DNA from: Vitrella brassicaformis CCMP3155
Lineage: Eukaryota; Protista; Chromerida
Length of the DNA: 14,260 bases
Assembly: GCA_001179505.1 (NCBI GenBank)
Contig: CDMY01000870.1
Location: 1 to 14,260 of the forward strand
Direction of reading: 5' to 3'
Below, piece after piece: positions 1-14,260 of this stretch. Position 1 is the first letter of the stretch, and the number at the start of each line of letters is the position of its first letter. A program made the translations under genes and the position numbers. Below the pieces are notes generated by a model. It was given only the letters and a program-made list of their open reading frames with translations, did no database searches and was not told where the DNA came from.

Positions 1-96
1 AGCTTTGCCCCCACAAGGCCTGATAGCTGAGTTCGTGGAATGACTCGGAGTATAGCGGTCTGTAACCATTTCCGACGTCTGGGGACACATTCGTCC

Positions 97-174
97 ATGT
101 CTTCAGCAATTCAGGGTAGAGTCTTTCTCTCCCTTTTTTGCCTTTGCCTCTCCCCATCTCTCCTGCCGACAGCA
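97..174 (+). other. Putative N-terminal signal peptide (MSSAIQGRVFLSLFCLCLSPSLLPTA)
   Basis: Basic residue, then hydrophobic core FLSLFCLCL, then small residues. It fits the extracellular location expected for peroxidase and DOMON domains. The same bases could instead be a 57-nt GT-AG intron (116-172). Confidence 0.5.
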
Positions 175-3100
175 TGCCAATCCAATCAGAAGAACGGCAT
201 CGATAGCAAAACGCCGCTTGCTTCACTCCCTGGTCACCCCTATTGTCGTAAGGCAGGGCTGCATTCTTATTTGCCCTCTGGCGAGATGCGGGATGACTTG
301 CCGCCTGCTAGTGAGGTGGCGAAACAGGTAAAGGATTACTGATGCGCTCATGGCGCGTATACGGATGTTCATGATATGTGTACGTGTAGCGTGCATGCTG
401 CTTCTTCTCTTTGTTTGTGCATACAGGCCTTCAGCTCTCTGCCAGCTCCGCTGGACACATCAGCTTCGACTCTTCTCTACGCATGGGGCCAGTTCATTAT
501 TTCACACATTTCCCAGTCAAGAAAGGCACACGACGAACAAATCGGTTTGGCCTTCCCTACCCGTCACTCTCCCTCATATGCCGCCAACTGCTCTTCTTTT
601 TCAGGTACCTCTTTCTTCCGCAGTGCCTATACGGTCATTGAGGGCATCAGACATCCGATAAATCGCAAGAGTGTGTTTATAGATGGGTCATCTCTCTATG
701 GAGAAAATGAGAAACAGAGAAGGACGGTGAGAGAGGGAAAGGGAGGTAGGGTAAGATTGGATAGCAGCGGCTTGCCTGAGGGAGAGGGGAAGGAGAAGGA
801 TGAATGTCGGCATTTTGCCTTTGCGGATCCTTTGTTGAATCTTCATCCGCTGCTAAGCGTCTTTGCTATTGGTGAGTACACACACGTAGTACACGTTGAT
901 ATGCATACCCGTACATACTGAAAAAAGAAATACAAGAGTGAGCTCTGTTTTGTCCTTCATTCGCTTTTGCGTAACGCACATGCGAATCAATGTATGCGTG
1001 CATATCTATTTGTGTCTTTACCTATATCCAGTTCTCCTTCGCGAGCACAATCGCTATGCAGCCGTACTGGCTTTGCGTCATCCTCAGTGGTCGGATGATG
1101 ACATCTTTTACGAAGCGAAAGCATGGATTGTGGCACTCATGCAGAAGATTACACTCGAACAGGTGGCGAGAAAAGTGTTTCGACCTACACTGTACCTGTC
1201 TCTACGCATGTTGCTGTTTCATAATTATGCATGCTCTGGGGCAAATGTGCATATGGATGTATACATGAATGTACACTATGTATCCTTATGTGTGTCGTTT
1301 CAGTATTTGCCGGTCCTCCTTGGACATCCGTTGCCTCCCTATCGAGGCCATGACCCAGCCATCGATCCTTCAATTGACGTCTTCGTAGCATCCACTGTAT
1401 TTAGGTATATACACGCATGTACGGCAAGACGGATGTACATATATATATGGTCGACAGCTCGTCTTGGTTTTCAGGTATGGCCCTTTCATTATTCCTCCTC
1501 TTATTCACCTTTACGACCCAATTACCCTCAAGCCACACCCACTCGGTATGCACCATTTTGCATCTTAGCTATACATATACATACGCTACATGCACATACA
1601 CACACATATGGTACCAGATATATACAAACATGTCCACATGTAGGCCCCATCCCCCTCTCCTCCACCATCTGCCACCCCTATACTCTGCGATCAATCAACG
1701 TCGAGCCCTTCATATTTGGAGCACTCCTACAGGCGGCAGCACTCATGCGAGGAAGAATGAATACAGGTGGCGTGATTGTCAAGGCAGATAAACACTCTAT
1801 CCGATGCATGCATGCGAACACGTAATGTGTATGCCTCTAATGATGCGTGGAATGTTTTTTGTACCTCCATGCAGATATCCGTCACACGCCTCCCCCTTCC
1901 TCCTGCAACGACACCTCTAACTGTGCATTCGACCTCGCAGCAGTCGATGTGCTGAGGGGAAGAGACTGGGGCGTAGGTAAGTCTGTTGTCGTAGATGGTC
2001 AGATTGTCCCTTCCCTACATACGTATCTCACTCATCGCGCAAAAGAATACGTAAATCCTTTGTGCTTTCGATGGATTTCCACCTCTGTGTCTATTTCATC
2101 GTCAGGCTTCTATAATGATGTGCGGCAGAGCTATGAATTATCGAGAGTGGAGAGTTTTAGGGAATTTGGTGAGATGGGTGACGTGTTGGAAGAGGTGTAT
2201 GGTGATGTTGACAGGATAGAGGCTTATGTGGGAGCGAATTTAGGTGAAAGGGGGGTGTGGGAGATATTGACAGATCTTGTTAATTAGTGAAAATATGCGT
2301 CTGTAGTAGCAAATATGTGCTTGAGTATTATCCATGCCTTTCCTTTTTTGGCTCCATGCAGAAATGCTGCGTCATTCTCCCTCTGTCGAAAGTCATGGCG
2401 TCCTTCCGCCTCTTGACAAAGCAGCTACACATGACACTTTTCAGAAAATAAGACATGCAGATCCAAGGTGAGAGGCATAGAGAAGGCCATGAATCTTGAT
2501 ACTTGTCCAACCATGTATTGTGCGTCAGATGGTTTGAGAATTATCTGTCTTATTTCGACAGCTTCCGTACGAACATCGCTTCCTCTCCCCCTCCTCCTCC
2601 CTCCTTTCCATTCAAAGATGTCGAACTCGCTAAGCAGCTCGTTTCAGTATCTCTTGCAGACGTCTTGATGTGGAATACGCGCCTCTGTCGTTATATCCCG
2701 AGTAACCCATTCCGCTTCTCCCCTGAAGAGGTCTTCTCCAACATTTATGTTTCATCCCCTCTTTCTCCCTTCTTCGCCCCGTCGCCCTTATATGCGCAAT
2801 GTGACGATACTTACCATAAAGTAAAGGGAGGGAAAGAAGAAAATGACGATCCTTCCGTACGTACAATGCAACTATGTGAGGGCGATCTGTTGATTCGGTG
2901 GAAAGTTACTGATATGACTGATGAGATTGACTTTGAACTGAGAGGGCGCACGACAGGTGAGTCGGCACACATATACATATACACATGGATTTCTTCTCCT
3001 TCATATGTACATGTGTCTATCCATCCACCAGGTTGGGTAGGTATCGGCTTCTCGTCAAACGGCCGTATGCACGACTCAACACTCCTCATCGCCCACAATC

Positions 3101-6100
3101 TCCACAACCAAACCAGTATACCAATCGTCCAAGCCTATCGAGCAGGAAGCGACCGTCTACCTCGCTTAGATGACGAGCGGTCGAAGGCAATACGTGTGAT
3201 GGAAGGGAGAGAGGAAGAAGGATGGACTACTGTGAGGTTTGCCGTAAGATTGGGCGATATAGGCATCGACATTAGCGGAGAGGAAAGAAAGACCACGTGG
3301 TTCTTGGGTGCTGTTGGGCCGGATGGGAAGAAGGGTCTGTGTGAGGGAGAGGTGAGTGAGACGGGATGGATGGAAGGAAAGACGTACAAAGGAATGTATA
3401 TATACGCAGAGAGGGGGATATTGGTGCTTACATTGCATGCACTGTATTTAGCTGTAAATCATCTTTCGAGCTCTCTCTCTCTATATATGTGTGGGTGCCT
3501 GCAGGATGCCTACCACCAAGGCAAACGGCAATCAGTCCAAGTGGACTTTATACGAGGAAGGGGCACTATCACTGCTAACGACTATCGACCTGTGATGTGG
3601 GTTCACGGGGCGATCATGTGGGTGGCGGCAACTTTCCTTCTGCCGTTAGCCGTGTGTATATCGAGATATTTCAAGCATACGAAGTGGTAGGAGGGATATT
3701 TACGGAGTGAGGGACCTTTACACATATATATCACAAAAAGATACGTACAGACAATGGACGACATATGTATACATTGATTGTTTTCTCTCATATATACATT
3801 CATGTGCATCTCTTTTCTCAGGTGGTTGTCAGCCCACGAACGTATCGGAATTACCCTAGCAGGCAACATGGTTGGCCTAGTATTTACCGCCATCGCCGAA
3901 AAGAACGCACGAATTGCTACCGTTCATGGGGTGGTCGGTCTTGGATTGGCTGCTATGGTGCTTTTCCTGCTGGTCTCGGGCTTCATTAACCGGAAGTGGC
4001 AGGCCTTGGTAGGTTGGTCGACGGACAACACGAGAGATGTATACGTGTATACGTACGTCCATGTGTATGCATACAGATGCACATGCATATATATATATAT
4101 GTCTATACATACGCATATATACAGATGTACGTGAACACAGGCGGATGGACATATACATAGAACCATCACTGTCCTCACAGGCCTCCAAAAGGATCGTCAG
4201 CCGTCAGACATTCAGACTCTTCCGTTGTCTTCACGCATTCATGGGCAAAGCTCTCTTATTCGGTGCTTTCGGGAGCTCCATCCGAGGTATGTGCTCTACT
4301 TTTTCTACATACACCTTAGTGCGTATTCGTTTGTCACCTCTGAGTTAATCCTTGTTTTTTGACATGTAGGCTGCATGCTTCTCTTTCCCACGACTCCGTG
4401 GGTCTGGCAGGCTCAACTGGCCCTATGTGTAGTAATTTGCGTCGTCATATGTCCGTTAGAAGTGAGACGGCGTTATCCGAGGATGTTTTGTAGTATCTGT
4501 CATGCGCTGCCGCGGGGAATGCAGGTATGTAAGAAGGGAGGTGGGAGCTTTCCTATATCTGACTATACACTATGCAGATACGTGCGCGCATGTGTATATC
4601 TATGTTGCAGATGGGCATTCTCACTCCCTTGGACCTCAGCTATGTGTCCTCTCTTTCCCACAACACTGACCCAGGCCCTAAATCTTCATACCTCAAGCAG
4701 TGTTTTAAGTGGCTCTGCTTCGGTATATATGCATATTATCGCATGAAAAGAACACCGATTTATCTTTGGTTCCGATTCATCTTTGGCTCATCTCTCCTCT
4801 CCTTTGTCACAACAGATAGGAAGGGCCCTCGTTCGATCCGTGCAGCAGAACGGCTGTTCACGTATGATGAAGTGTGTGATGCGGTAGAGAAAGGGGGTCA
4901 GTGGGTGGCTGTCATAGATGGTGTGTATGATGTGAAGGGATTCTTGGGAGCACATCCGGGTAAGATAATGAAGGGGGCAAGGATTTGATATTGCAACTAT
5001 TTGTAAATGGATGGATGAGCTGTGCTTGGTATGTGTGCGTTCGGTACGTGTGTGCTGTGACAGGTGGGAGTGCTTTAATCGAAAGGCATATTGGCTGTGA
5101 TATCACGTTTCTGTTTCTGGGGTATGCGTATGTACGTATGTATGTATGTACGAATCTATGTAAAGCAATACCTCATGAAATACCCGTATTGTATTGCGGC
5201 AGCCTGGAGGAGTCCAGGAGGAATTTTTTGCCACAGAGACGTACATCGACTATGACCGCTACATCATGGACCTTCCTAAGGAGACGGTCATTGCGTAAGC
5301 TAATATTTACATGCTTCTAATGTCCTCATCTTATTGCATACATGTTTATTGCATCTGTCTGCACACATACTTAGTTAGACCTCCCCAGCCTGACACAGTT
5401 GCACCTCCGAAGTCCAATATAGCACCGTCATCTTTACGGTCGTCTTCTCCATTACCCATCAGCAATCAACTTGGTACGCCATCGCACATAATGGAGGACA
5501 TCAAGATGCCCTTTCATAATGTCAAGTTGGTTTTTGCAGATACACTGGACCCGACAAGAACTGGGAGGACACACAGTGTGTTTGCTGCCTACACGCTGAA
5601 AGGATACAGGTATGTAGAGTCGTATGGATGTTATGTAGGCATATGCATATATACAACTGCAAGGACAGATATGTATGTATCTCTCTGTGACTGTCTGTGT
5701 ATAGAGTTGGCACCTTGATCACTTCCAGTAGCCCATACGATGAACGCAACGAGCTAGACCTCTCTTTTACACCGCCTCCCTCCTACTACGCACAACGCAC
5801 TTTCTGTCTCAATGTCAAACAGAGAGATGCTCTCACTGTCTTGACAAATAACAGACTCTCTTCAATCCGCTCGTCATCCGATCGACTTCCGAAGAAGGCC
5901 GATACGATATTGTTTCCAGAGACAAATGAGGATAAGGCAGAGGGCAAGGCAGACAAGAGAGTCATTGCGGGGTAAGCTGGTGAGAAAGAGGCATCTATTC
6001 ATGTATACATAAGTCTCACTATACATGAATACCTTCGTGGGTCACTGATATTATTCTCCTCTACTTTTCTTCTGTTTCCTTTGCCTTTTACAGGTTATAC

Positions 6101-7432
6101 CAGGAGATGCACGTGGTAGAGAACGTCATGCTGAGTCGATGTGCGAAGCGAGACAAGGGCCTTCTACCCGTCCACCGCCTGACGCTCGAAAGCTTAGTGC
6201 CTCTTGCCGTGCACTCATATCGACCAGGTGAGAAAACACATACAACATACAAACATGTCCTTCGTATGTATGTATATATGCTATTCCTTCACCTTTCAGG
6301 CATGCACGTGGAGGTTCTAGAAGATATCGATGGTCGTCGCTTAAAACGTTCCTATAGCGTTGCGTCCTCTCCCACCCCCCATCGCTTAAGCCTCCTCTTC
6401 AAAGTCTACCCTACCGCAGGACGGGGCATGTCCCAGACACTATCCAACGTGCGTCCAGGTGATACCATTCGTGTGAGAGGCTTCAAAGGACCGGATCTTC
6501 TTGAGGGCGCGCCCCTTCTGCCCTCTACCATCGAGAACAAGACCATGTGGCACGAGTTTTGGCCGTATTGTGGTGTGATAGTCGGAGGGACTGGTATTGT
6601 TGCTTTGCTGAACTTCATAAGGCATCAGGAGCATGCGCTGAAGGCTCTTAGAGACAACCCAGCGATTGATACATCTGGGACGGAAATGGGGTTGATTTTC
6701 GCGGCCAAGGATATGGATGAGGCAAAGGTAGGTATGACATAAGTGTACATATATGCACATATATTCCAATCAATATGTTACGTCGCTTACATTCGCTTAC
6801 GTGTACGTCTGCGTACTTGCATATATGATTGCGTTCAGGCGCTTGGCTGGGATGAGGTTTGTGAGCTGAAGAGGGGGCTGGCCATGAAGAAAAACGGCGT
6901 ATCGCATTACATGCATGGGCGACTGATGCTGTCTCGGGTCGGCTATGAACTATCCGGTGATTCCCCAGACGTCCCGGAAGGAGACAATGATGTTCGAGTG
7001 GGCATCATAGATTCTTTCACGCTCAAGGAGGGCATCCCCTTCCTCCATGCATTGGCTGAGATAGCGAAGCAAAGTAAGCCAGAGATCCACGGAAGTGTCG
7101 AAGTGACGGCGAGAGAAGCATCTTCGGATACCATGCATTTCTCGACTCCAGGAAATCGGTTGTCGACCGATGGGGAGCAAGATATACGGACGCTTCCGAA
7201 CATAGATACGTCCATGAATTTAGAGGACTCCATGCCATCGAGCAACATGCCTTTCAAGTCCAACCACTTGGACAAATCCATCCATACAACGAGTGAGAGA
7301 TGGCAGTCTGGGAAGCCGACGCTCAGAACGTCCCGTATTTTTATCTGTGGGCCGCAGTCGTTCAGAGATGGAATGTGGTTGGTTCTTGAGGAATTGGGCA
7401 TTCCGACGGAATGCCTACGATTCCTTGAGTGA
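97..7432 (+). CDS. Multi-exon membrane redox fusion protein (about 1629 aa): peroxidase-like / DOMON / cytochrome b561 / cytochrome b5 / FAD-NAD(P)H oxidoreductase
   Basis: Hand-spliced exons, all joins GT-AG and phase-compatible: 97-327, 427-871, 1032-1162, 1304-1404, 1475-1545, 1644-1766, 1875-1976, 2106-2243, 2362-2467, 2529-2956, 3032-3351, 3505-3686, 3822-4008, 4181-4286, 4370-4524, 4611-4722, 4816-4959, 5064-5121, 5203-5294, 5375-5609, 5705-5971, 6094-6227, 6300-6727, 6839-7432 (TGA). Total 4890 nt with no internal stop. Family motifs are rebuilt across junctions (e.g. VLLREHNR, ITLEQ|YLPVLLG, DPR|WFEN, HPG|G, KGYR|VGTL). The 5' end is uncertain: an alternative uses ATG 40 with an intron at 116-172 and gives the same length. 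Confidence 0.9.
193..2715 (+). other. Animal heme peroxidase (An_peroxidase / peroxidase-cyclooxygenase superfamily)-like domain, non-canonical active site
   Basis: Motifs WGQFI, INRKSVFIDGSSLYG, LLREHNRYA..L...HPQWSDDDIFYEAK, QKITLEQYLPVLLG, DLAAVDVLRGRDWG, YNDVR, LEEVYGDVDRIEAYVG, DPRWFEN, SLADVL..NT....SNPF. Confidence 0.9.
2866..3558 (+). other. DOMON domain, heme-binding type
   Basis: LLIRWKV..DEIDFELRGRTTGWVGIGFS.NGRM, TTVRF, WFLGAVG, YHQGKR. Candidate heme ligands Met (3067-3069) and His (3514-3516) are both present. Confidence 0.85.
3590..4470 (+). other. Cytochrome b561 (CYBDOM-type) transmembrane domain, five hydrophobic helices
   Basis: Four His ligands in the expected contexts: VHGAIM (3604), WLSAHERIG (3835), TVHGVVG (3925), RCLHAFMGK (4232). 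A fifth helix follows (AQLALCVVICVVICPLEV). Confidence 0.85.
4850..5720 (+). other. Cytochrome b5-like heme-binding domain with a large internal insertion
   Basis: FTYDEV...WVAVIDGVYDVKGFLGAHPGGSALIERHIGCDITFLFLG, then THSVFAAYTLKGYRVGTL. His ligands at 4953 and 5572. Confidence 0.85.
6094..7432 (+). other. FNR-family (cytochrome b5 reductase-like) FAD-binding and NAD(P)H-binding domains
   Basis: RSYSVAS (6347), FKVYP..G.GMS, VRGFKG, VIVGGTGI (6584), IFICGP (7337-7354), LEELGIP. Confidence 0.9.
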
Positions 7433-10548: not shown

Positions 10549-10915
10549 TTGTTGTCGATTGATTTAGTGCGACACCGTGCACGAATGTCCACCATCGTCC
10601 ACACAAGCTATCGATACATATCTGTGCACAAAGCGTTCGAGTCACTCATCCGAGAAGATCCCCGCCCCATCCATAACCCGAACACTACGCCATGACTGCC
10701 TCCCGCCACGCAGACAAAGACTAGCAGCCCGCACCAACGCGACAGACAGACGAGGACGCAACCAACACTGTACACGTGCCTGCCCTCTGTCTGACCACCC
10801 CTGCCTTGTCACCAGCTGCTCGGTCAGGCGAGTGAGGAAGTGCTCAGCCTCTCTCCCCCACACCGTGACGACCGGGGGGTGAAGGTGACTGACAGATTCT
10901 CGCATTGTTGTCGAT
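10549..10915. repeat. Target-site duplication TTGTTGTCGAT at 10549-10559 and 10905-10915
   Basis: Exact 11-bp direct repeat read directly from the sequence, bracketing the retrotransposon fragment. Confidence 0.85.
10560..10904 (-). mobile_element. 5'-truncated CRE-like (restriction-like endonuclease class) non-LTR retrotransposon fragment
   Basis: Encodes CENLSVTFTP[frameshift]VVTVWGREAEHFLTRLTEQLVTRQGWSDRGQARVQCWLRPRLSVALVRAASLCLRGGR…DE*, matching the C-terminal pattern of CRE-clade ORFs (FTP.V….G.EA..F..RL……W.R.R.S….RA…C.RG.R). About 80 nt of 3' UTR follows. Flanked by an exact 11-bp direct repeat. Confidence 0.8.
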
Positions 10916-11049
10916 CGGCAGACACAGCAGCGGCTACGCATGCGCAGGGAGGTACATACACACTTTGACTGCATGCAAATCACCCGGTGTACCGTTGATG
11001 GGGGTGGTTAAGAAGCCTGTCAGATGGAGAGCCTGAAGGCGTCCAAATC

Positions 11050-13410
11050 GTGAGATGCCTTTTTTGGAAAAGGGTCGCTTCGCCTTTCTTCTCTCATCCT
11101 TCTGCCCTCTTCACTCTGAAGTCAGCGCCTCGCCTCTGTACTGTGTCATGTCACCTACGTGTCAGACAGACCTTGTGTGTGAGTGTGGGCGACAATGCTT
11201 TCGACGTGGCGCGCTCGGGCTTGTTCTGTTTGATAAATGGTGTCTTTGACAATGAATTCGTTACCACTGATTTGTTCTGACGCGCGACAAGTTTCACACA
11301 CTCTTCCTGCCGCTTCGTCATTTGACGGCTGCATCGCATTGGCCATGAGGAGACAGAGGTCTGCAGCTATAGATGACACGAAAAGTGAGATACATCATTC
11401 AACGCGCCGCACCATCTCACAACTGACTTTGCATTCATTGCAAGCTGGATCGAATCAATAATCGTTGATGACTTCTCGCTCTAAACCCCCGAAGGCTCAT
11501 CGGGGGCTGCCTGGATTATCAATCCCGTACCCCGATAAAGACATTCCATTCGCTGGCGATCTCCTTGGGAGGGCCACAATCAAGCTGGCAGGACCGTACA
11601 AAGTCGCAAGGCATGCAAGCTGAGAGACACACTCATTGGGAGCATACATGGTTCCCTTTCTCGTGTCAGAAAGGTGCTGCCTCTCAAGAGACCCAGCGAT
11701 TCGTCCAGTCGGTGGCCCATTTTAACCAAGAAGAAGCACTGTGACTTATGTAGCTGTCGTGTATCTGACAAAGTCCCTCGACAATCGGTCTGACCTGGTC
11801 CTCCTCGCTCAGAAGGCTTCCGCGACCAGAATGCTCGCAAGTCAATTGACTTCCAGCTAGAAAACTACAATGTCAATGTCACTGTGTATAGGGTGAGTGT
11901 GAAAGCCATTCGATCGTCGCATTAAGCGTCCATTTGTCGCAGCTTTACGTGCTTGAAAGCATTAGGAGATGACCGGAGTGATCAACTTACCCCTCGATGG
12001 CCACACACGAGTTTCGCCTGCTGGTAGGTAACCGGAATGTGATAGTCGCACCATCATTCTTGGCCATCGAGTGCAGTTGGGGCGCTAGCAGAACCGGTGT
12101 GTCTCGCATTGCGGTTGACGTCACTTGCCAAGAAGAGAATCTAGAGTTCTACATGCTACAAAGTAAGGCCATTTCCTACGTCTCTCCGTCCTCAAGACTG
12201 AAAGCTGAGGCATTTTTCACAGGACGGAAGAGAAGACAGGTTGCGTGATAGACGGACAGCACCGATGGGTCTGATGTTGTGTGTATTGACTTGCAGCAGT
12301 TTGAGGCTCAAATGGCCATGCTGAGACCGAAACCGGCCCGGTACCGAAGAAGCCGGCCATCTTGCCTTAAGAGCCTGGCTCAAGACCCAGCAGAACTGTA
12401 GGGACAAAACAACAAAGAACAGCAGGTATTGGCTATCTTTGCTCATCTCCTTGGTTGATCTGGCTGAGATGCCCGGTCCACAAAGCTGATGCGTGAGACG
12501 AATCAATTGATGAGTTCTATGTCTACGTCAGAGAGAGCAGAAGGGCATGGGCAGCAGAGGTTCAGCTCTATGACACACAGAACGGACAACTCGGAGGAGA
12601 GGTGAAGAATACGATACACGACTGTATGCATGTTTCTCTCTCTCTCTGCAGGTAGTGCTTTAGGTGGACATATTGTGCTCTCTCGAAATAGTCAACTGGT
12701 CTTTGGAGATGAACAGACAAGCTCTAAGCGAATCCCTCACGGTTGGATGCTTGGCTCTGCAAGTCAGTCTCTCTCTCTCTCTCACTAAATGTGTCTCTTT
12801 GCTCGCTGCCCATGCGTCGGCGTGTTTGGTAGCACCTGTGTGCTAAAGCGCTGGGCACACCAAGGAAGGACCATGCTGTCGTGGTGATTAAGTAAGACAT
12901 AAGCGATCTGAGGCCAGAAGGCTACCCTTTGTGTGCCTGCTTGTGTGTAGGGAGGTGTGGATTCCCTAAGCATCTATCGTCGCTCGATCTGCCTCTCGAT
13001 AGACGTCAAGAGAGATGTCCACAAATTCAATTGGCCTGTGCTCCTAAAACGCTCGGCGGACCGCGATTGTGAGTGTAAGTAACTCTTCAAAAGGCTCTCT
13101 ATATCCGATCTGGTATAAGCAGACGCAAAGAAGCACGCAAACTTGACGTCACGTGTGTTCTTCGTGTATGTGTGTCATGTGCCAGGGATAAAGAAATCAC
13201 GGTGTTGGTTCAAGGCTCCAGCCAGCATCTTTCTCAAGGCGGAGGGACCGACCGGTGATGCCCGACAGCAAGCTGAAGAATCTAGCCGAAGGTGACTGCT
13301 ATCTGACTCTGTGTTTTTGCATTAATACAGAACCTATCCCTATGCGCAGCGTGTTTCATATGTTCGACAGAGTGTTCATGTGCACTCTGAAGTGTTTCCT
13401 CCCTCCCAGA
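11050..13410 (+). pseudogene. Multi-exon decayed gene of unrecognised family
   Basis: One frame runs 11050-11892 with 7 stops in about 280 codons. It continues in phase through GT-AG introns at 11893-11942, (12163-12222), 12240-12296, 12602-12651, 12763-12832, 12892-12950, 13075-13185 and 13292-13330. Protein-like exons include ATHEFRLLVGNRNVIVAPSFLAIECSWG, DESIDEFYVYVRESRRAWAAEVQLYDTQ, VDILCSLEIVNWSLEMNRQALSESL and IDVKRDVHKFNWPVLLKRSADRDCE|WIKKSRCWFKAPASIFLK. At least two frameshifts are needed. The true start is unknown. Confidence 0.6.
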
Positions 13411-13520
13411 CACACAGATATTCAGCATATCCACACACTCCAAGTCCACGCGTGCATGCGCAGGTTTGCGCATAGAGATGTTTATCATATAGCCACACAG
13501 TCCAAGTCCACGCGTGCATG
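13411..13520 (-). repeat. Inverted, diverged copies (about 1.6 units) of the downstream minisatellite
   Basis: The reverse complement reads CATGCACGCGTGGACTTGGACTGTGTGGCTATATGATAAACATCTCTATGCGCAAACCTGCGCATGCACGCGTGGACTTGGAGTGTGTGGATATGCTGAATATCTGTGTG. It aligns to the forward unit, best to the variant at about 14040-14100. Confidence 0.85.
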
Positions 13521-13530
13521 AAATGATGAA

Positions 13531-14260
13531 TTCTCTGTGCGCACACCTGCGCATGCTCGTGTCGACTTGGAGTGTGTGTGTATATGAATGACTGTGTGCG
13601 CACGCCGCTCGTGTTCTGTGTGCGCACACCTGCGCATGCTCGTGTCGACTTGGAGTGTGTATATATGATGAACGAATGTCTCCCCGTGTGCGCACATCTG
13701 CGCATGCTCGTGTCGACTCGGAGTGTGTGTGTATATGAATGACCGTGTGCGCACACCTGCGCATGCTCGTGTCCTGTGTGCGCACACCTGCGCATGCTCG
13801 TGTCGACTTGGAGTGTGTATATATGATGAACGAATGTCTCCCTGTGTGCGCACATCTGCGCATGCTCGTGTCGACTCGGAGTGTGTGTGTATATGAATGA
13901 CTGTGTGCGCACACCTGCGCATGCTCGTGTCCTGTGTGTGCACACTTGCGCATGCTCGTGTCGACTTGGAGCGTATATATGATGAATGTCTCCGCGCATG
14001 CTCGTGTCGACTCGGAGTGTGTGTGTATATGAATGTCTGTGTGTGCACGCCTGCGCATGCACATTTGGACTTGGACTGTGTGTATATGATGAATGTCTCT
14101 GTGTGCGCACATCTGCGCATGCTCGTGTCGACTCGGAGAGGTGTGCGCATGCTCGTGTCGACTCGGAGTGTGTATATATGATGAATGTCTCCCTGTGTGC
14201 GCACACCTGCGCATGCTCGTGTCGACTCGGAGTGTGTGTGTATATGAATGACTGTGTGCG
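13531..14260 (+). repeat. Minisatellite array (31/59/68-bp units on a shared 31-bp core) with a 158-bp higher-order repeat; runs off the window end
   Basis: The core CTGTGTGCGCACACCTGCGCATGCTCGTGTC repeats about 14 times, followed by tail A (GACTCGGAGTGTGTGTGTATATGAATGA), tail B (GACTTGGAGTGTGTATATATGATGAACGAATGTCTCC) or no tail. Tail B starts at 13647, 13805 and 13963, i.e. 158 bp apart. Confidence 0.95.

What the first reader, a model, noticed from the sequence alone, without database searches (positions are those of the whole stretch)
484..1490. Peroxidase-like domain has lost the canonical heme ligands and catalytic residues, as DUOX has
Seen in the sequence, compared with established myeloperoxidase-family motifs. 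WGQF(L/I)DHD is here WGQFIISH: the distal His position is Ser (502-504) and the heme-ester Asp is Ile. GDxRxNE is ADPLLNL: distal Arg and heme-ester Glu are both Leu (832, 841). FRFGHS is FRYGPF: the proximal His is Pro (1482-1484). NIQRGRDHG is DVLRGRDWG. The Ca-binding IDGS loop and scaffold motifs are retained. Mammalian DUOX also has Ser at the distal His position and lacks the proximal His. Inference: a pseudo-peroxidase acting as a scaffold, docking or ROS-handling module, possibly a convergent loss. Caveat: a His sits one residue after the distal position (505-507) and might partly compensate.
Basis: partly seen in the sequence, partly recalled or inferred. Interest (0 to 1): 0.7.

Follow-up and report, generated by a model that had tools for sequence, protein, structure and literature searches.

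The report
Haem-ligand-less peroxidase domain on electron-wire protein
An alga's long membrane protein, built to carry electrons from NAD(P)H across a membrane, starts with a peroxidase-like domain that has lost the histidine that normally holds the haem iron, so this domain probably no longer works as a peroxidase, much as in animal DUOX.

Summary
In a 24-exon gene (40-7432, + strand, 1650 codons) the animal-haem-peroxidase domain reads WGQFIISH, ADPLLNL, FRYGP and DVLRGRDWG at the stated coordinates. A profile alignment built without this gene puts Ile, Ser and His at the ester-Asp, distal-His and Ca-Asp sites. It puts Leu and Leu at the distal-Arg and ester-Glu sites, and Pro at the proximal His.

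The context changes the reading. The gene belongs to an apparently unstudied peroxidase-DOMON-cytochrome b561-cytochrome b5-FNR family found in brown algae, chytrids and other early fungi. In 17 DOMON-linked relatives the ester residues are always missing, and the distal His (2 of 15) and Arg (6 of 17) usually are. So most of the "losses" are clade-wide. What is private to this gene is proximal His to Pro (His in 16 of 17 relatives and 159 of 163 domains) and Ca-Asp to His.

All haem and flavin ligand motifs of the other four domains are intact, so only the peroxidase domain looks dead. One transcript contig confirms four splice junctions but retains introns 4-7, so the 1404/1475 junction rests on homology spacing and donor strength.

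The scan had already noted this architecture on other DNA of this genome.

The parts
40..7432 (+). Whole gene: 24 exons, all GT-AG, one 1650-codon ORF. It encodes a signal peptide, a peroxidase-like domain, DOMON, a 5-helix cytochrome b561 core, cytochrome b5 and an FNR-type reductase.
   Evidence: Model assembled from the three-frame translation. Pfam hits on single exons. Colinear BLASTP over about 900-1000 residues with five-domain proteins, E about 1e-60. Junctions 327/427, 871/1032, 1162/1304 and 2243/2362 are confirmed by transcript contig L002.
208..2733 (+). Peroxidase-like (An_peroxidase, PF03098) domain, model aa 57-570. It is spread over the end of exon 1, exons 2-9 and the start of exon 10.
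   Evidence: Local HMM domain hit for model 57-570. Pfam on exons 2, 3, 7 and 8. Pfam on P0170, a natural spliced product of exons 1-4: E 1.7e-44.
484..510 (+). Distal helix motif WGQFIISHI. Gln kept (490-492). Ester Asp is Ile (499-501). Distal His is Ser (502-504). Ca-ligand Asp is His (505-507).
670..690 (+). Ca-binding loop S-V-F-I-D-G-S, retained (canonical T-x-F/Y-x-D-x-S).
823..843 (+). ADPLLNL in place of GDxRxNE. Distal Arg is Leu (832-834). Ester Glu is Leu (841-843).
1400..1404 (+). End of exon 4: Phe codon and the first two bases of the Arg codon of F-R-Y-G-P. The donor GTATAT follows at 1405.
   Evidence: The donor scores 8.4 bits on a leave-one-out matrix of this gene's donors, whose range is 1.8-11.7.
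1405..1474 (.). Intron 4 (70 nt). If it is not spliced, the frame reads FRYIHACTARRM..., with a His at the canonical proximal position by coincidence. It is retained in the one transcript contig found.
   Evidence: The alternative in-phase donor 1434|1435 scores 2.0 bits and would insert 10 residues where all 22 aligned relatives have fixed spacing.
1475..1545 (+). Exon 5: (R)YGPFIIPPLIHLYDPITLKPHPL. Pro 1482-1484 sits at the proximal His position. The Asp at +11 has the same spacing as in the relatives.
   Evidence: L002 carries the same letters.
1946..1972 (+). DVLRGRDWG. The Asn that H-bonds the proximal His is Asp (1946-1948). The propionate-binding Arg is kept (1955-1957). The RDHG His is Trp (1967-1969).
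3032..3516 (+). DOMON domain (exon 11 and the start of exon 12), with the conserved Met (3067-3069) and His (3514-3516) pair.
   Evidence: Pfam DOMON on exon 11. Both residues are invariant in the 13 five-domain relatives. A Met/His pair is proposed as the b-haem ligands in the CYBDOM protein HYP1 (PMC10784544).
3505..4524 (+). Cytochrome b561-type membrane core (exons 12-15). Four conserved His at 3604-3606, 3835-3837, 3925-3927 and 4232-4234.
   Evidence: Weak Pfam Cytochrom_B561 hit on exon 13. Hydrophobic segments at aa 786-804, 820-838, 849-867 and 921-939. The four His align with invariant His of the relatives.
4816..5609 (+). Cytochrome b5-like domain with a long insert. HPGG His at 4953-4955 and second His (T-H-S) at 5572-5574. 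The exon 18/19 borders are uncertain.
   Evidence: Pfam Cyt-b5 on exon 17. Alignment with the relatives' H-x-H-S motif.
6094..7432 (+). FNR-type NAD(P)H/FAD reductase (exons 22-24). R-S-Y-S at 6347-6358. The GGTG and CGP motifs are kept.
   Evidence: Pfam FAD_binding_6 on exon 23. Alignment.

Best explanation
The gene encodes a divergent member of a five-domain membrane "electron wire" family: a lumenal or extracellular peroxidase-like domain and DOMON, a b561 membrane core, and cytosolic b5 and FNR.

In this copy the peroxidase-like domain keeps its fold but cannot hold haem in the canonical way. The axial His is Pro, its Asn partner is Asp, and there is no distal His/Arg pair and no ester-forming Asp/Glu. 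It is therefore most likely a non-catalytic pseudo-peroxidase.

Electrons from NAD(P)H would still pass FAD, b5 haem, the two b561 haems and the DOMON haem. They would leave to an outside acceptor at the DOMON haem, as shown for plant CYBDOM ferric/cupric reductases. The dead peroxidase domain would then serve as a structural cap, docking surface or substrate-handling module.

Shown here: the substitutions, the intact ligands elsewhere, and family membership. Inferred: absence of haem, the exit point of the electrons, and the role of the domain.
For: - Substitutions at all canonical haem and catalytic sites were called by an HMM that never saw this gene. They agree with alignments to solved peroxidases.
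- The proximal His is present in 159 of 163 other domains and in 16 of 17 DOMON-linked relatives.
- The splice that yields Pro is the strongest donor (8.4 against 2.0 bits). It reproduces the invariant spacing from the His position to the Asp at +11 seen in all aligned relatives.
- The gene is not decaying. The ORF is intact over 24 exons and it is transcribed, with four junctions confirmed.
- The DOMON Met/His pair, the four b561 His, both b5 His and the FNR motifs RSYS, GGTG and CGP are all kept.
- Scaffold conservation is within the clade's range.
- There is precedent for a haem-free peroxidase-homology domain on a transmembrane NADPH-driven chain: hDUOX1 shows no haem density (PMC7794343).
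- There is precedent for the DOMON haem acting as terminal reductant: HYP1 (PMC10784544).
Against: - No RNA read spans 1404/1475. The only transcript contig retains introns 4-7.
- Both Arg that bind the haem propionates in canonical enzymes (the FR Arg and the QR Arg) and the distal Gln are kept. The four other domains that lack the proximal His have lost one or both Arg. That would fit continued haem binding or a recent loss.
- No structure model of the spliced domain could be made here.
- The terminal branch is as long in the other domains as in the peroxidase domain, so rates give no sign of relaxed constraint specific to this domain.
- The function of the relatives' own peroxidase domains is unknown.
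Confidence: 0.58

Rival explanations
1. The domain still binds haem, or another redox cofactor, in a non-canonical way. For example, the His at 505-507 on the distal helix could be the sole axial ligand. The domain would then act as the last redox centre of the chain, as an electron acceptor or oxygen reducer rather than a peroxide activator.
For: - Both propionate-binding Arg and the distal Gln are retained, unlike in the other proximal-His-less domains.
- In this clade a His moves along the distal helix: position -1 in chytrids (VHLD, LHTE), 0 in brown algae and +1 here.
- One phmmer alignment to alpha-dioxygenase puts this His on the distal His by opening a one-residue gap.
- The scaffold is as conserved as in relatives that keep the axial His.
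Against: - The His at 505-507 aligns with the Ca-ligand Asp, which is D or E in 175 of 177 domains.
- A one-residue shift on a helix turns the side chain by about 100 degrees.
- Pro cannot ligate iron, and no His, Cys, Met or Tyr sits at or next to the proximal position. The nearest His is at +8, beyond the helix.
- No member of the superfamily with such coordination was found in the papers read.
Confidence: 0.2
2. The Pro is an artefact of my splice model. The mature mRNA uses another junction or exon that restores an axial His.
For: - Intron 4 is retained in the only transcript contig.
- Read-through gives F-R-Y-I-H, which Pfam even aligns up to residue 335.
- In the window the frame stays open from 896 to 1825.
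Against: - Read-through replaces 24 homologous residues with about 80 unrelated ones. In L002 it runs into a stop at codon 400, because of a 4-nt indel in intron 5.
- The in-phase alternative donor 1434|1435 is weak (2.0 bits) and inserts 10 residues in a stretch of invariant length.
- Exons 5-8 are colinear with the relatives only when introns 4-7 are removed.
- No other GH-encoding stretch exists in 1405-1643 in any frame.
Confidence: 0.07
3. This is a redundant paralogue on its way to loss. The peroxidase domain is simply decaying and has no role.
For: - Earlier notes of this scan report same-architecture genes on other pieces of this genome. One has a peroxidase domain that keeps its haem ligands. 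I did not check this.
- The gene has the longest terminal branch in the tree.
Against: - A 1650-codon ORF with no stop or frameshift over 24 exons.
- All ligand residues of four other domains are kept.
- Scaffold conservation is within the clade's range.
- The long branch is shared by all domains and fits a lone, deeply branching lineage.
- The gene is transcribed.
Confidence: 0.1

Closest known systems
DUOX peroxidase homology domain (family 7 of the peroxidase-cyclooxygenase superfamily; hDUOX1 structures 7D3E/7D3F, mouse 6WXR)
   Same: An N-terminal extracytoplasmic An_peroxidase-fold domain without the haem-ligand His. It is fused to a transmembrane dihaem core and a cytosolic FAD/NAD(P)H reductase. 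Exons 1-4 (P0170:60-322) hit DUOX1 at E 2e-14. Papers report no haem density and loss of peroxidase activity.
   Different: The membrane core here is cytochrome b561 plus DOMON, not a NOX ferric-reductase domain. There are no EF hands, and there is an extra b5 domain. DUOX1 keeps an Arg at the distal Arg position where this gene has Leu. The gene groups with DOMON-linked proteins, not with DUOX, so the loss is independent. No DUOX sequence was in my tree, so the distance was not measured.
Five-domain peroxidase-DOMON-b561-b5-FNR proteins. Examples: the unnamed product of Discosporangium mesarthrocarpum (P0014), and hypothetical proteins of Blyttiomyces (P0052), Synchytrium (P0053), Spizellomyces (P0084) and Paraglomus (P0082).
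   Same: Same domain order, and colinear alignment over about 900-1000 residues. Shared absence of the ester Asp/Glu and, in most, of the distal His and Arg. The DOMON, b561, b5 and FNR ligand residues are conserved. A starred clade of 11 rows holds this gene with the brown-algal and main chytrid members.
   Different: Thirteen of thirteen keep the proximal His and the Ca-ligand Asp/Glu (where aligned). This gene has Pro and His. Identity is only about 24%.
Euglena longa peroxidase-DOMON-cyclase protein (P0096, EukProt)
   Same: The only other DOMON-linked peroxidase domain in my set without a proximal His (Ile).
   Different: It has also lost both propionate-binding Arg (Gln, Gln) but keeps the distal Arg. 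Its C-terminal partners differ (PF00211 cyclase).
Dictyostelium peroxinectin A / DdPoxA (6ERC) and the cyanobacterial-type peroxidase 8S6C
   Same: Best solved-structure matches: E 8e-17 and 9e-16 for exons 1-4, and E 2e-06 for exon 3.
   Different: These are functional haem peroxidases with the canonical motifs. The 8S6C alignment shows WGQFLDHD and GDVRSNE where this gene has WGQFIISH and ADPLLNL.
Plant CYBDOM ferric/cupric reductases (HYP1, CRR)
   Same: DOMON with a Met/His pair on a b561 core. Electrons leave at the DOMON haem to outside Fe(III) or Cu(II) (PMC10784544). The same pair and the four b561 His are present here.
   Different: CYBDOMs have no peroxidase domain and no fused b5/FNR. 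Their donor is cytosolic ascorbate (my knowledge), not NAD(P)H.

Membership tests
Peroxidase-cyclooxygenase superfamily (Pfam An_peroxidase, PF03098) | Significant match to the family profile over the whole domain | tested here: met
   Exons 2 and 3 score 47.5 and 48.7 bits (cut-off 25). Exon 8 scores 23.9 and exon 7 scores 14.9. P0170 (exons 1-4 spliced) gives E 1.7e-44. The local HMM aligns model aa 57-570 as one domain.
Peroxidase-cyclooxygenase superfamily, catalytically active members | Distal motif G-Q-x-x-D-H-D (ester Asp, catalytic His, Ca Asp), as defined in PMC4420034 | tested here: not met
   G-Q-F-I-I-S-H: Asp is Ile, His is Ser, Asp is His.
Peroxidase-cyclooxygenase superfamily, catalytically active members | R-x-x-E motif (catalytic Arg, ester Glu) | tested here: not met
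   L-L-N-L at 832-843.
Peroxidase-cyclooxygenase superfamily, catalytically active members | Proximal His ligand, H-bonded to Asn | tested here: not met
   Pro at 1482-1484 and Asp at 1946-1948. This depends on the 1404/1475 splice, which is supported by spacing and donor score but not by RNA.
Peroxidase-cyclooxygenase superfamily | Ca-binding site (Asp after the distal His, plus the T-x-F/Y-x-D-x-S loop) | tested here: inconclusive
   The loop S-V-F-I-D-G-S is kept, but the first ligand Asp is His.
Peroxidase-cyclooxygenase superfamily | Bound haem and peroxidase activity | not testable with these tools
   Needs protein expression and spectroscopy. The spliced domain could not be handed to the structure tool.
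DUOX (dual oxidase, family 7) | NOX-type ferric-reductase membrane domain with EF-hand loop | tested here: not met
   Pfam finds DOMON, Cytochrom_B561, Cyt-b5 and FAD_binding_6, with no ferric-reductase or EF-hand hit. The relative P0014 shows the same set.
DUOX (dual oxidase, family 7) | Peroxidase homology domain lacking the haem-ligand His | tested here: met
   Pro at the proximal position. The DUOX property is taken from PMC7794343 and PMC4420034.
Five-domain peroxidase-DOMON-b561-b5-FNR family (unnamed) | Domain order and colinear homology along the protein | tested here: met
   BLASTP of the model against P0014, P0065, P0079 and P0061 covers about 900-1000 residues, E about 1e-60. The tree places it in a starred 11-row clade with them.
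Five-domain peroxidase-DOMON-b561-b5-FNR family (unnamed) | Conserved ligand residues of DOMON (Met, His), b561 (4 His), b5 (2 His) and FNR (RxYS, GxGxxP-like, CGP) | tested here: met
   All are present at the aligned columns.
Five-domain peroxidase-DOMON-b561-b5-FNR family (unnamed) | Proximal His in the peroxidase domain (13 of 13 five-domain relatives) | tested here: not met
   Pro. This is the feature that sets this copy apart.

The most novel reading that the evidence does not exclude
The domain is not dead but rewired. With both propionate-binding arginines kept and a histidine moved one step along the distal helix, it would hold haem through a ligand never seen in this superfamily. It would then serve as a fifth redox centre that takes electrons from the DOMON haem and passes them to oxygen or a metal. 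The shifting His position across the clade (-1, 0, +1) would mark a family of electron-accepting rather than peroxide-activating "peroxidase" folds.
Probability: 0.12. Interest if true: 0.75.

Novelty: new variant of a known kind. Interest (0 to 1): 0.45.

Why it matters
DUOX has been the one known case in which a peroxidase fold without its haem histidine sits on top of a transmembrane NAD(P)H-driven electron chain, and what that domain does is still unclear. This gene shows a second, independent case, built on different parts (DOMON, b561, b5, FNR).

It also sits in a family whose other members keep the axial histidine. That gives a natural with/without comparison. If the ectodomain is haem-free yet the protein still reduces an outside acceptor, the peroxidase fold has a haem-independent job. 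If it still binds haem, the coordination is new for the superfamily.

The analysis also corrects the picture for the family. Loss of covalent haem links and of the catalytic His/Arg pair is the rule in DOMON-linked peroxidase domains, so none of them is likely to be a classical halide-oxidising peroxidase.

Tried and rejected
- **Word search with the exon-2 ORF.** It found only a near-identical Logan contig.
- **Full HMMER search with exon 2.** It gave one strong hit (itself) and 49 weak ones. The best was 30% identical at E 5.5e-08, so no close orthologue is public.
- **Word search with P0014.** It gave the family. Repeating it on region 520-1130 gave only the two brown-algal proteins.
- **Exact DNA pattern from exon 5 in metagenome contigs.** It found nothing, not even L002, so that collection lacks the sample.
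- **Exon 2 alone against PDB.** At E 0.01 it gave nothing.
- **Domain-specific rate acceleration.** Rejected. The terminal branch is 2.6 in the peroxidase part, 3.6 in DOMON-b561 and 3.0 in b5-FNR.
- **P0035 and P0003 as possible paralogues of the same organism.** They come from other samples and were dropped.
- **Other donors and acceptors around 1404/1475.** They either change the frame into sequence with no homology or insert 10 residues.
- **Literature.** No paper on the five-domain family was found.
- **Handling of the joined model.** The joined (spliced) protein was built only inside run_python from window.fa and compared locally. It was not sent to any search or fold tool, so the joined searches and the structure prediction of the spliced domain were left out. 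Database searches used single exons by reference, or the public protein P0170.
- **ORFs between 7860 and 12510.** None has a Pfam hit.
Full report
**What is in the window.** The + strand from 40 to 7432 carries a 24-exon gene with short GT-AG introns (61-172 nt). When spliced it gives one uninterrupted ORF of 1650 codons.

Pfam scans of single exons, given by reference, find:
- An_peroxidase on exons 2, 3, 7 and 8, and DOMON on exon 11.
- A weak Cytochrom_B561 hit on exon 13, Cyt-b5 on exon 17 and FAD_binding_6 on exon 23.

A hydrophobic N-terminus (aa 28-46) and hydrophobic segments at aa 786-939 fit a particular topology: signal peptide, outside peroxidase and DOMON, a five-helix membrane core, and inside b5 and FNR.

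I built the joined protein only inside scripts and compared it locally. It was not sent to any search or fold tool, so joined database searches and a structure prediction of the spliced domain were left out.

- WGQFIISH at 484-507, with Ser 502-504 and His 505-507.
- ADPLLNL at 823-843, with Leu 832-834 and Leu 841-843.
- FRYGP across the 1404/1475 junction, with Pro 1482-1484.
- DVLRGRDWG at 1946-1972.

To avoid circularity I built an HMM from 22 relatives without this gene and aligned everything I had collected to it. The model aligned as one domain (aa 57-570). The canonical sites read as follows: Gln kept, ester Asp to Ile, distal His to Ser, Ca Asp to His, Ca loop S-F-D-S kept, distal Arg to Leu, ester Glu to Leu, FR Arg kept, proximal His to Pro, Asn to Asp, QR Arg kept, RDHG His to Trp.

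Alignments to solved peroxidases say the same. The motif definitions are those of PMC4420034. The letters are identical in a genomic Logan contig (L001, window 20-1407) and in a JGI transcript contig (L002), so they are not sequencing errors.

**What family it is.** Exon 2 has no close public relative. A full HMMER pass over 1.84 billion representatives gave itself and then 30% identity at E 5.5e-08.

One of the weak hits, an unnamed 1484-aa protein of the brown alga Discosporangium (P0014), has the same five Pfam domains in the same order. A word search from it found the same architecture in Choristocarpus, in many chytrids (Blyttiomyces, Synchytrium, Chytriomyces, Geranomyces, Phlyctochytrium, Thoreauomyces, Rhizoclosmatium, Dinochytrium, Spizellomyces), in Paraglomus and in Podila. 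It also found peroxidase-DOMON proteins with other C-terminal parts in Prymnesium, Euglena longa and uncultured eukaryotes.

The model aligns colinearly with these over about 900-1000 residues at about 24% identity, E about 1e-60. A maximum-likelihood tree of the peroxidase domains puts it in a starred 11-row clade (97/95) with the brown-algal and main chytrid five-domain proteins. It is weakly sister to the brown algae (85/81), on the longest terminal branch: 2.43 against a median of 0.69.

I found no paper on this family.

**What is clade-wide and what is private.** In the 17 DOMON-linked relatives:
- None has the ester Asp (0 of 15 aligned) or the ester Glu (0 of 17).
- Only the two brown algae keep the distal His (2 of 15).
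- Six of 17 keep the distal Arg.
- Sixteen of 17 keep the proximal His.
- All 15 aligned keep an Asp or Glu at the Ca-ligand site.

Chytrids carry a His one position earlier on the distal helix (VHLD, LHTE). This gene carries one a position later.

Two changes are private: proximal His to Pro, and Ca Asp to His. Across all 163 other domains with that column filled, 159 have His. The four exceptions are the degenerate N-terminal halves of two double-domain proteins, a Fibrobacter protein, and the Euglena longa protein.

**Is the Pro real?** The donor at 1404|1405 scores 8.4 bits on a leave-one-out matrix of this gene's donors, which range from 1.8 to 11.7. The only other in-phase donor (1434|1435) scores 2.0.

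With the chosen junction, the distance from the ligand position to the conserved Asp (+11) equals that of all aligned relatives. The alternative would add 10 residues there.

However, the 90% cluster of the exon-2 ORF held a 399-aa JGI protein (P0170) on a 1861-nt transcript contig, L002. L002 joins 327/427, 871/1032, 1162/1304 and 2243/2362 exactly as modelled, but it retains introns 4-7.

Read through, the text becomes FRYIHACTARRM..., with a His at the canonical position by coincidence. That continuation has no homology, and in L002 it stops at codon 400 because of a 4-nt indel in intron 5. Exons 5-8 are colinear with the relatives only when these introns are removed.

I therefore take L002 as an incompletely spliced transcript. 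I put about 0.9 on Pro, but the junction itself is not yet seen in RNA.

**Is the gene or the domain decaying?** The evidence is against it:
- The ORF is intact and transcribed.
- At the columns where all 13 five-domain relatives agree, this gene keeps the DOMON Met and His (3067-3069, 3514-3516). It also keeps the four b561 His (3604, 3835, 3925, 4232), the b5 HPGG His and second His (4953, 5572), and the FNR motifs RSYS, GGTG and CGP.
- The peroxidase scaffold keeps 62% of the columns that are at least 85% conserved in 134 canonical domains. That is inside the clade's range of 58-81%.
- The long branch is not specific to the peroxidase part: 2.6, against 3.6 and 3.0 for the other two parts. 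It reflects a lone lineage, not relaxed constraint on one domain.

**How it most likely works.** Shown: a complete set of ligand residues for NAD(P)H/FAD, b5, two b561 haems and a DOMON haem, and a peroxidase fold without an axial ligand or catalytic pair.

Inferred: the peroxidase-like domain is haem-free or at least not a peroxidase. Electrons leave at the DOMON haem, as in the plant CYBDOM reductase HYP1, whose DOMON Met/His pair and ferric/cupric reductase activity are described in PMC10784544. The dead domain acts as a cap or docking surface, as is thought for the haem-free DUOX1 domain (PMC7794343; PMC4420034; PMC4654585). I give this 0.58.

The main rival (0.2) is non-canonical haem binding. 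It is suggested by the retained propionate-binding Arg pair and Gln, and by the wandering His on the distal helix. Against it stand the Pro, the absence of any ligand-capable residue nearby, and the fact that His 505-507 aligns with a Ca ligand.

**Comparison and novelty.** The domain works like the DUOX peroxidase homology domain, but the gene is not a DUOX. The membrane core and partners differ, and the clade is different, so the loss is convergent.

It is a member of the five-domain family by architecture, colinearity and ligand residues, but it fails that family's near-universal proximal His. A pseudo-peroxidase is a known kind of thing. This one is a new variant in a new setting. The architecture itself had already been noted by this scan, on this window and on other pieces of the same genome.

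Earlier notes name the organism as the alga Vitrella brassicaformis. I could not check this.

Noticed in passing
window 10621-10938, and L001:1-318: A stretch of at least 318 nt, lying about 110 nt upstream of the window's first base in the Logan contig L001, is 100% identical to window 10621-10938. So a direct repeat flanks the gene: one copy just upstream, one about 3.2 kb downstream of the stop.
   Followed up: partly
window 13410-14260: A complex tandem array with nested periods of 31, 62, 68, 92 and 158 nt. It produces long spurious ORFs on both strands.
   Followed up: no
L002:892-1830 = window 1301-2243: The JGI transcript contig splices introns 1, 2, 3 and 8 but retains four consecutive introns (4-7), all inside the second half of the peroxidase domain. 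Its called product is a 399-aa truncated protein. This could be plain incomplete splicing or regulated intron retention.
   Followed up: partly
window 896-1825 and 2503-3690: Two long frames stay open across several introns: introns 3-5, and introns 10-11. Overall, 11 of 23 introns have lengths divisible by three and 10 of 23 have no stop in the read-through frame. A 4-nt indel in intron 5 breaks the first of these frames in L002.
   Followed up: partly
window 715 and 1205: There are two single-base differences from the Logan contig L001. C715G changes Gln to Glu in exon 2. The other lies in intron 3. There is also a 10-nt indel just upstream of the start codon.
   Followed up: no
relatives P0052, P0053, P0055, P0061, P0066, P0067: Chytrid members carry a His at the ester-Asp position (VHLD, LHTE) and Leu or Thr at the distal His position. 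This is a one-residue shift of the distal-helix His shared by a whole clade that keeps the proximal His.
   Followed up: partly
P0096 (Euglena longa, EukProt): A peroxidase-DOMON protein with a C-terminal cyclase domain (PF00211). It also lacks the proximal His (Ile) and both propionate-binding Arg, which is another independent loss in the DOMON-linked clade.
   Followed up: partly
window 5064-5609: The b5-like domain has a long, poorly conserved insert between the HPGG His and the second His, as in the relatives. My exon 18 donor (5131|5132, TAT|GTACGT, 1.9 bits) and exon 19 donor (1.8 bits) are the weakest in the gene, so these borders are uncertain.
   Followed up: no
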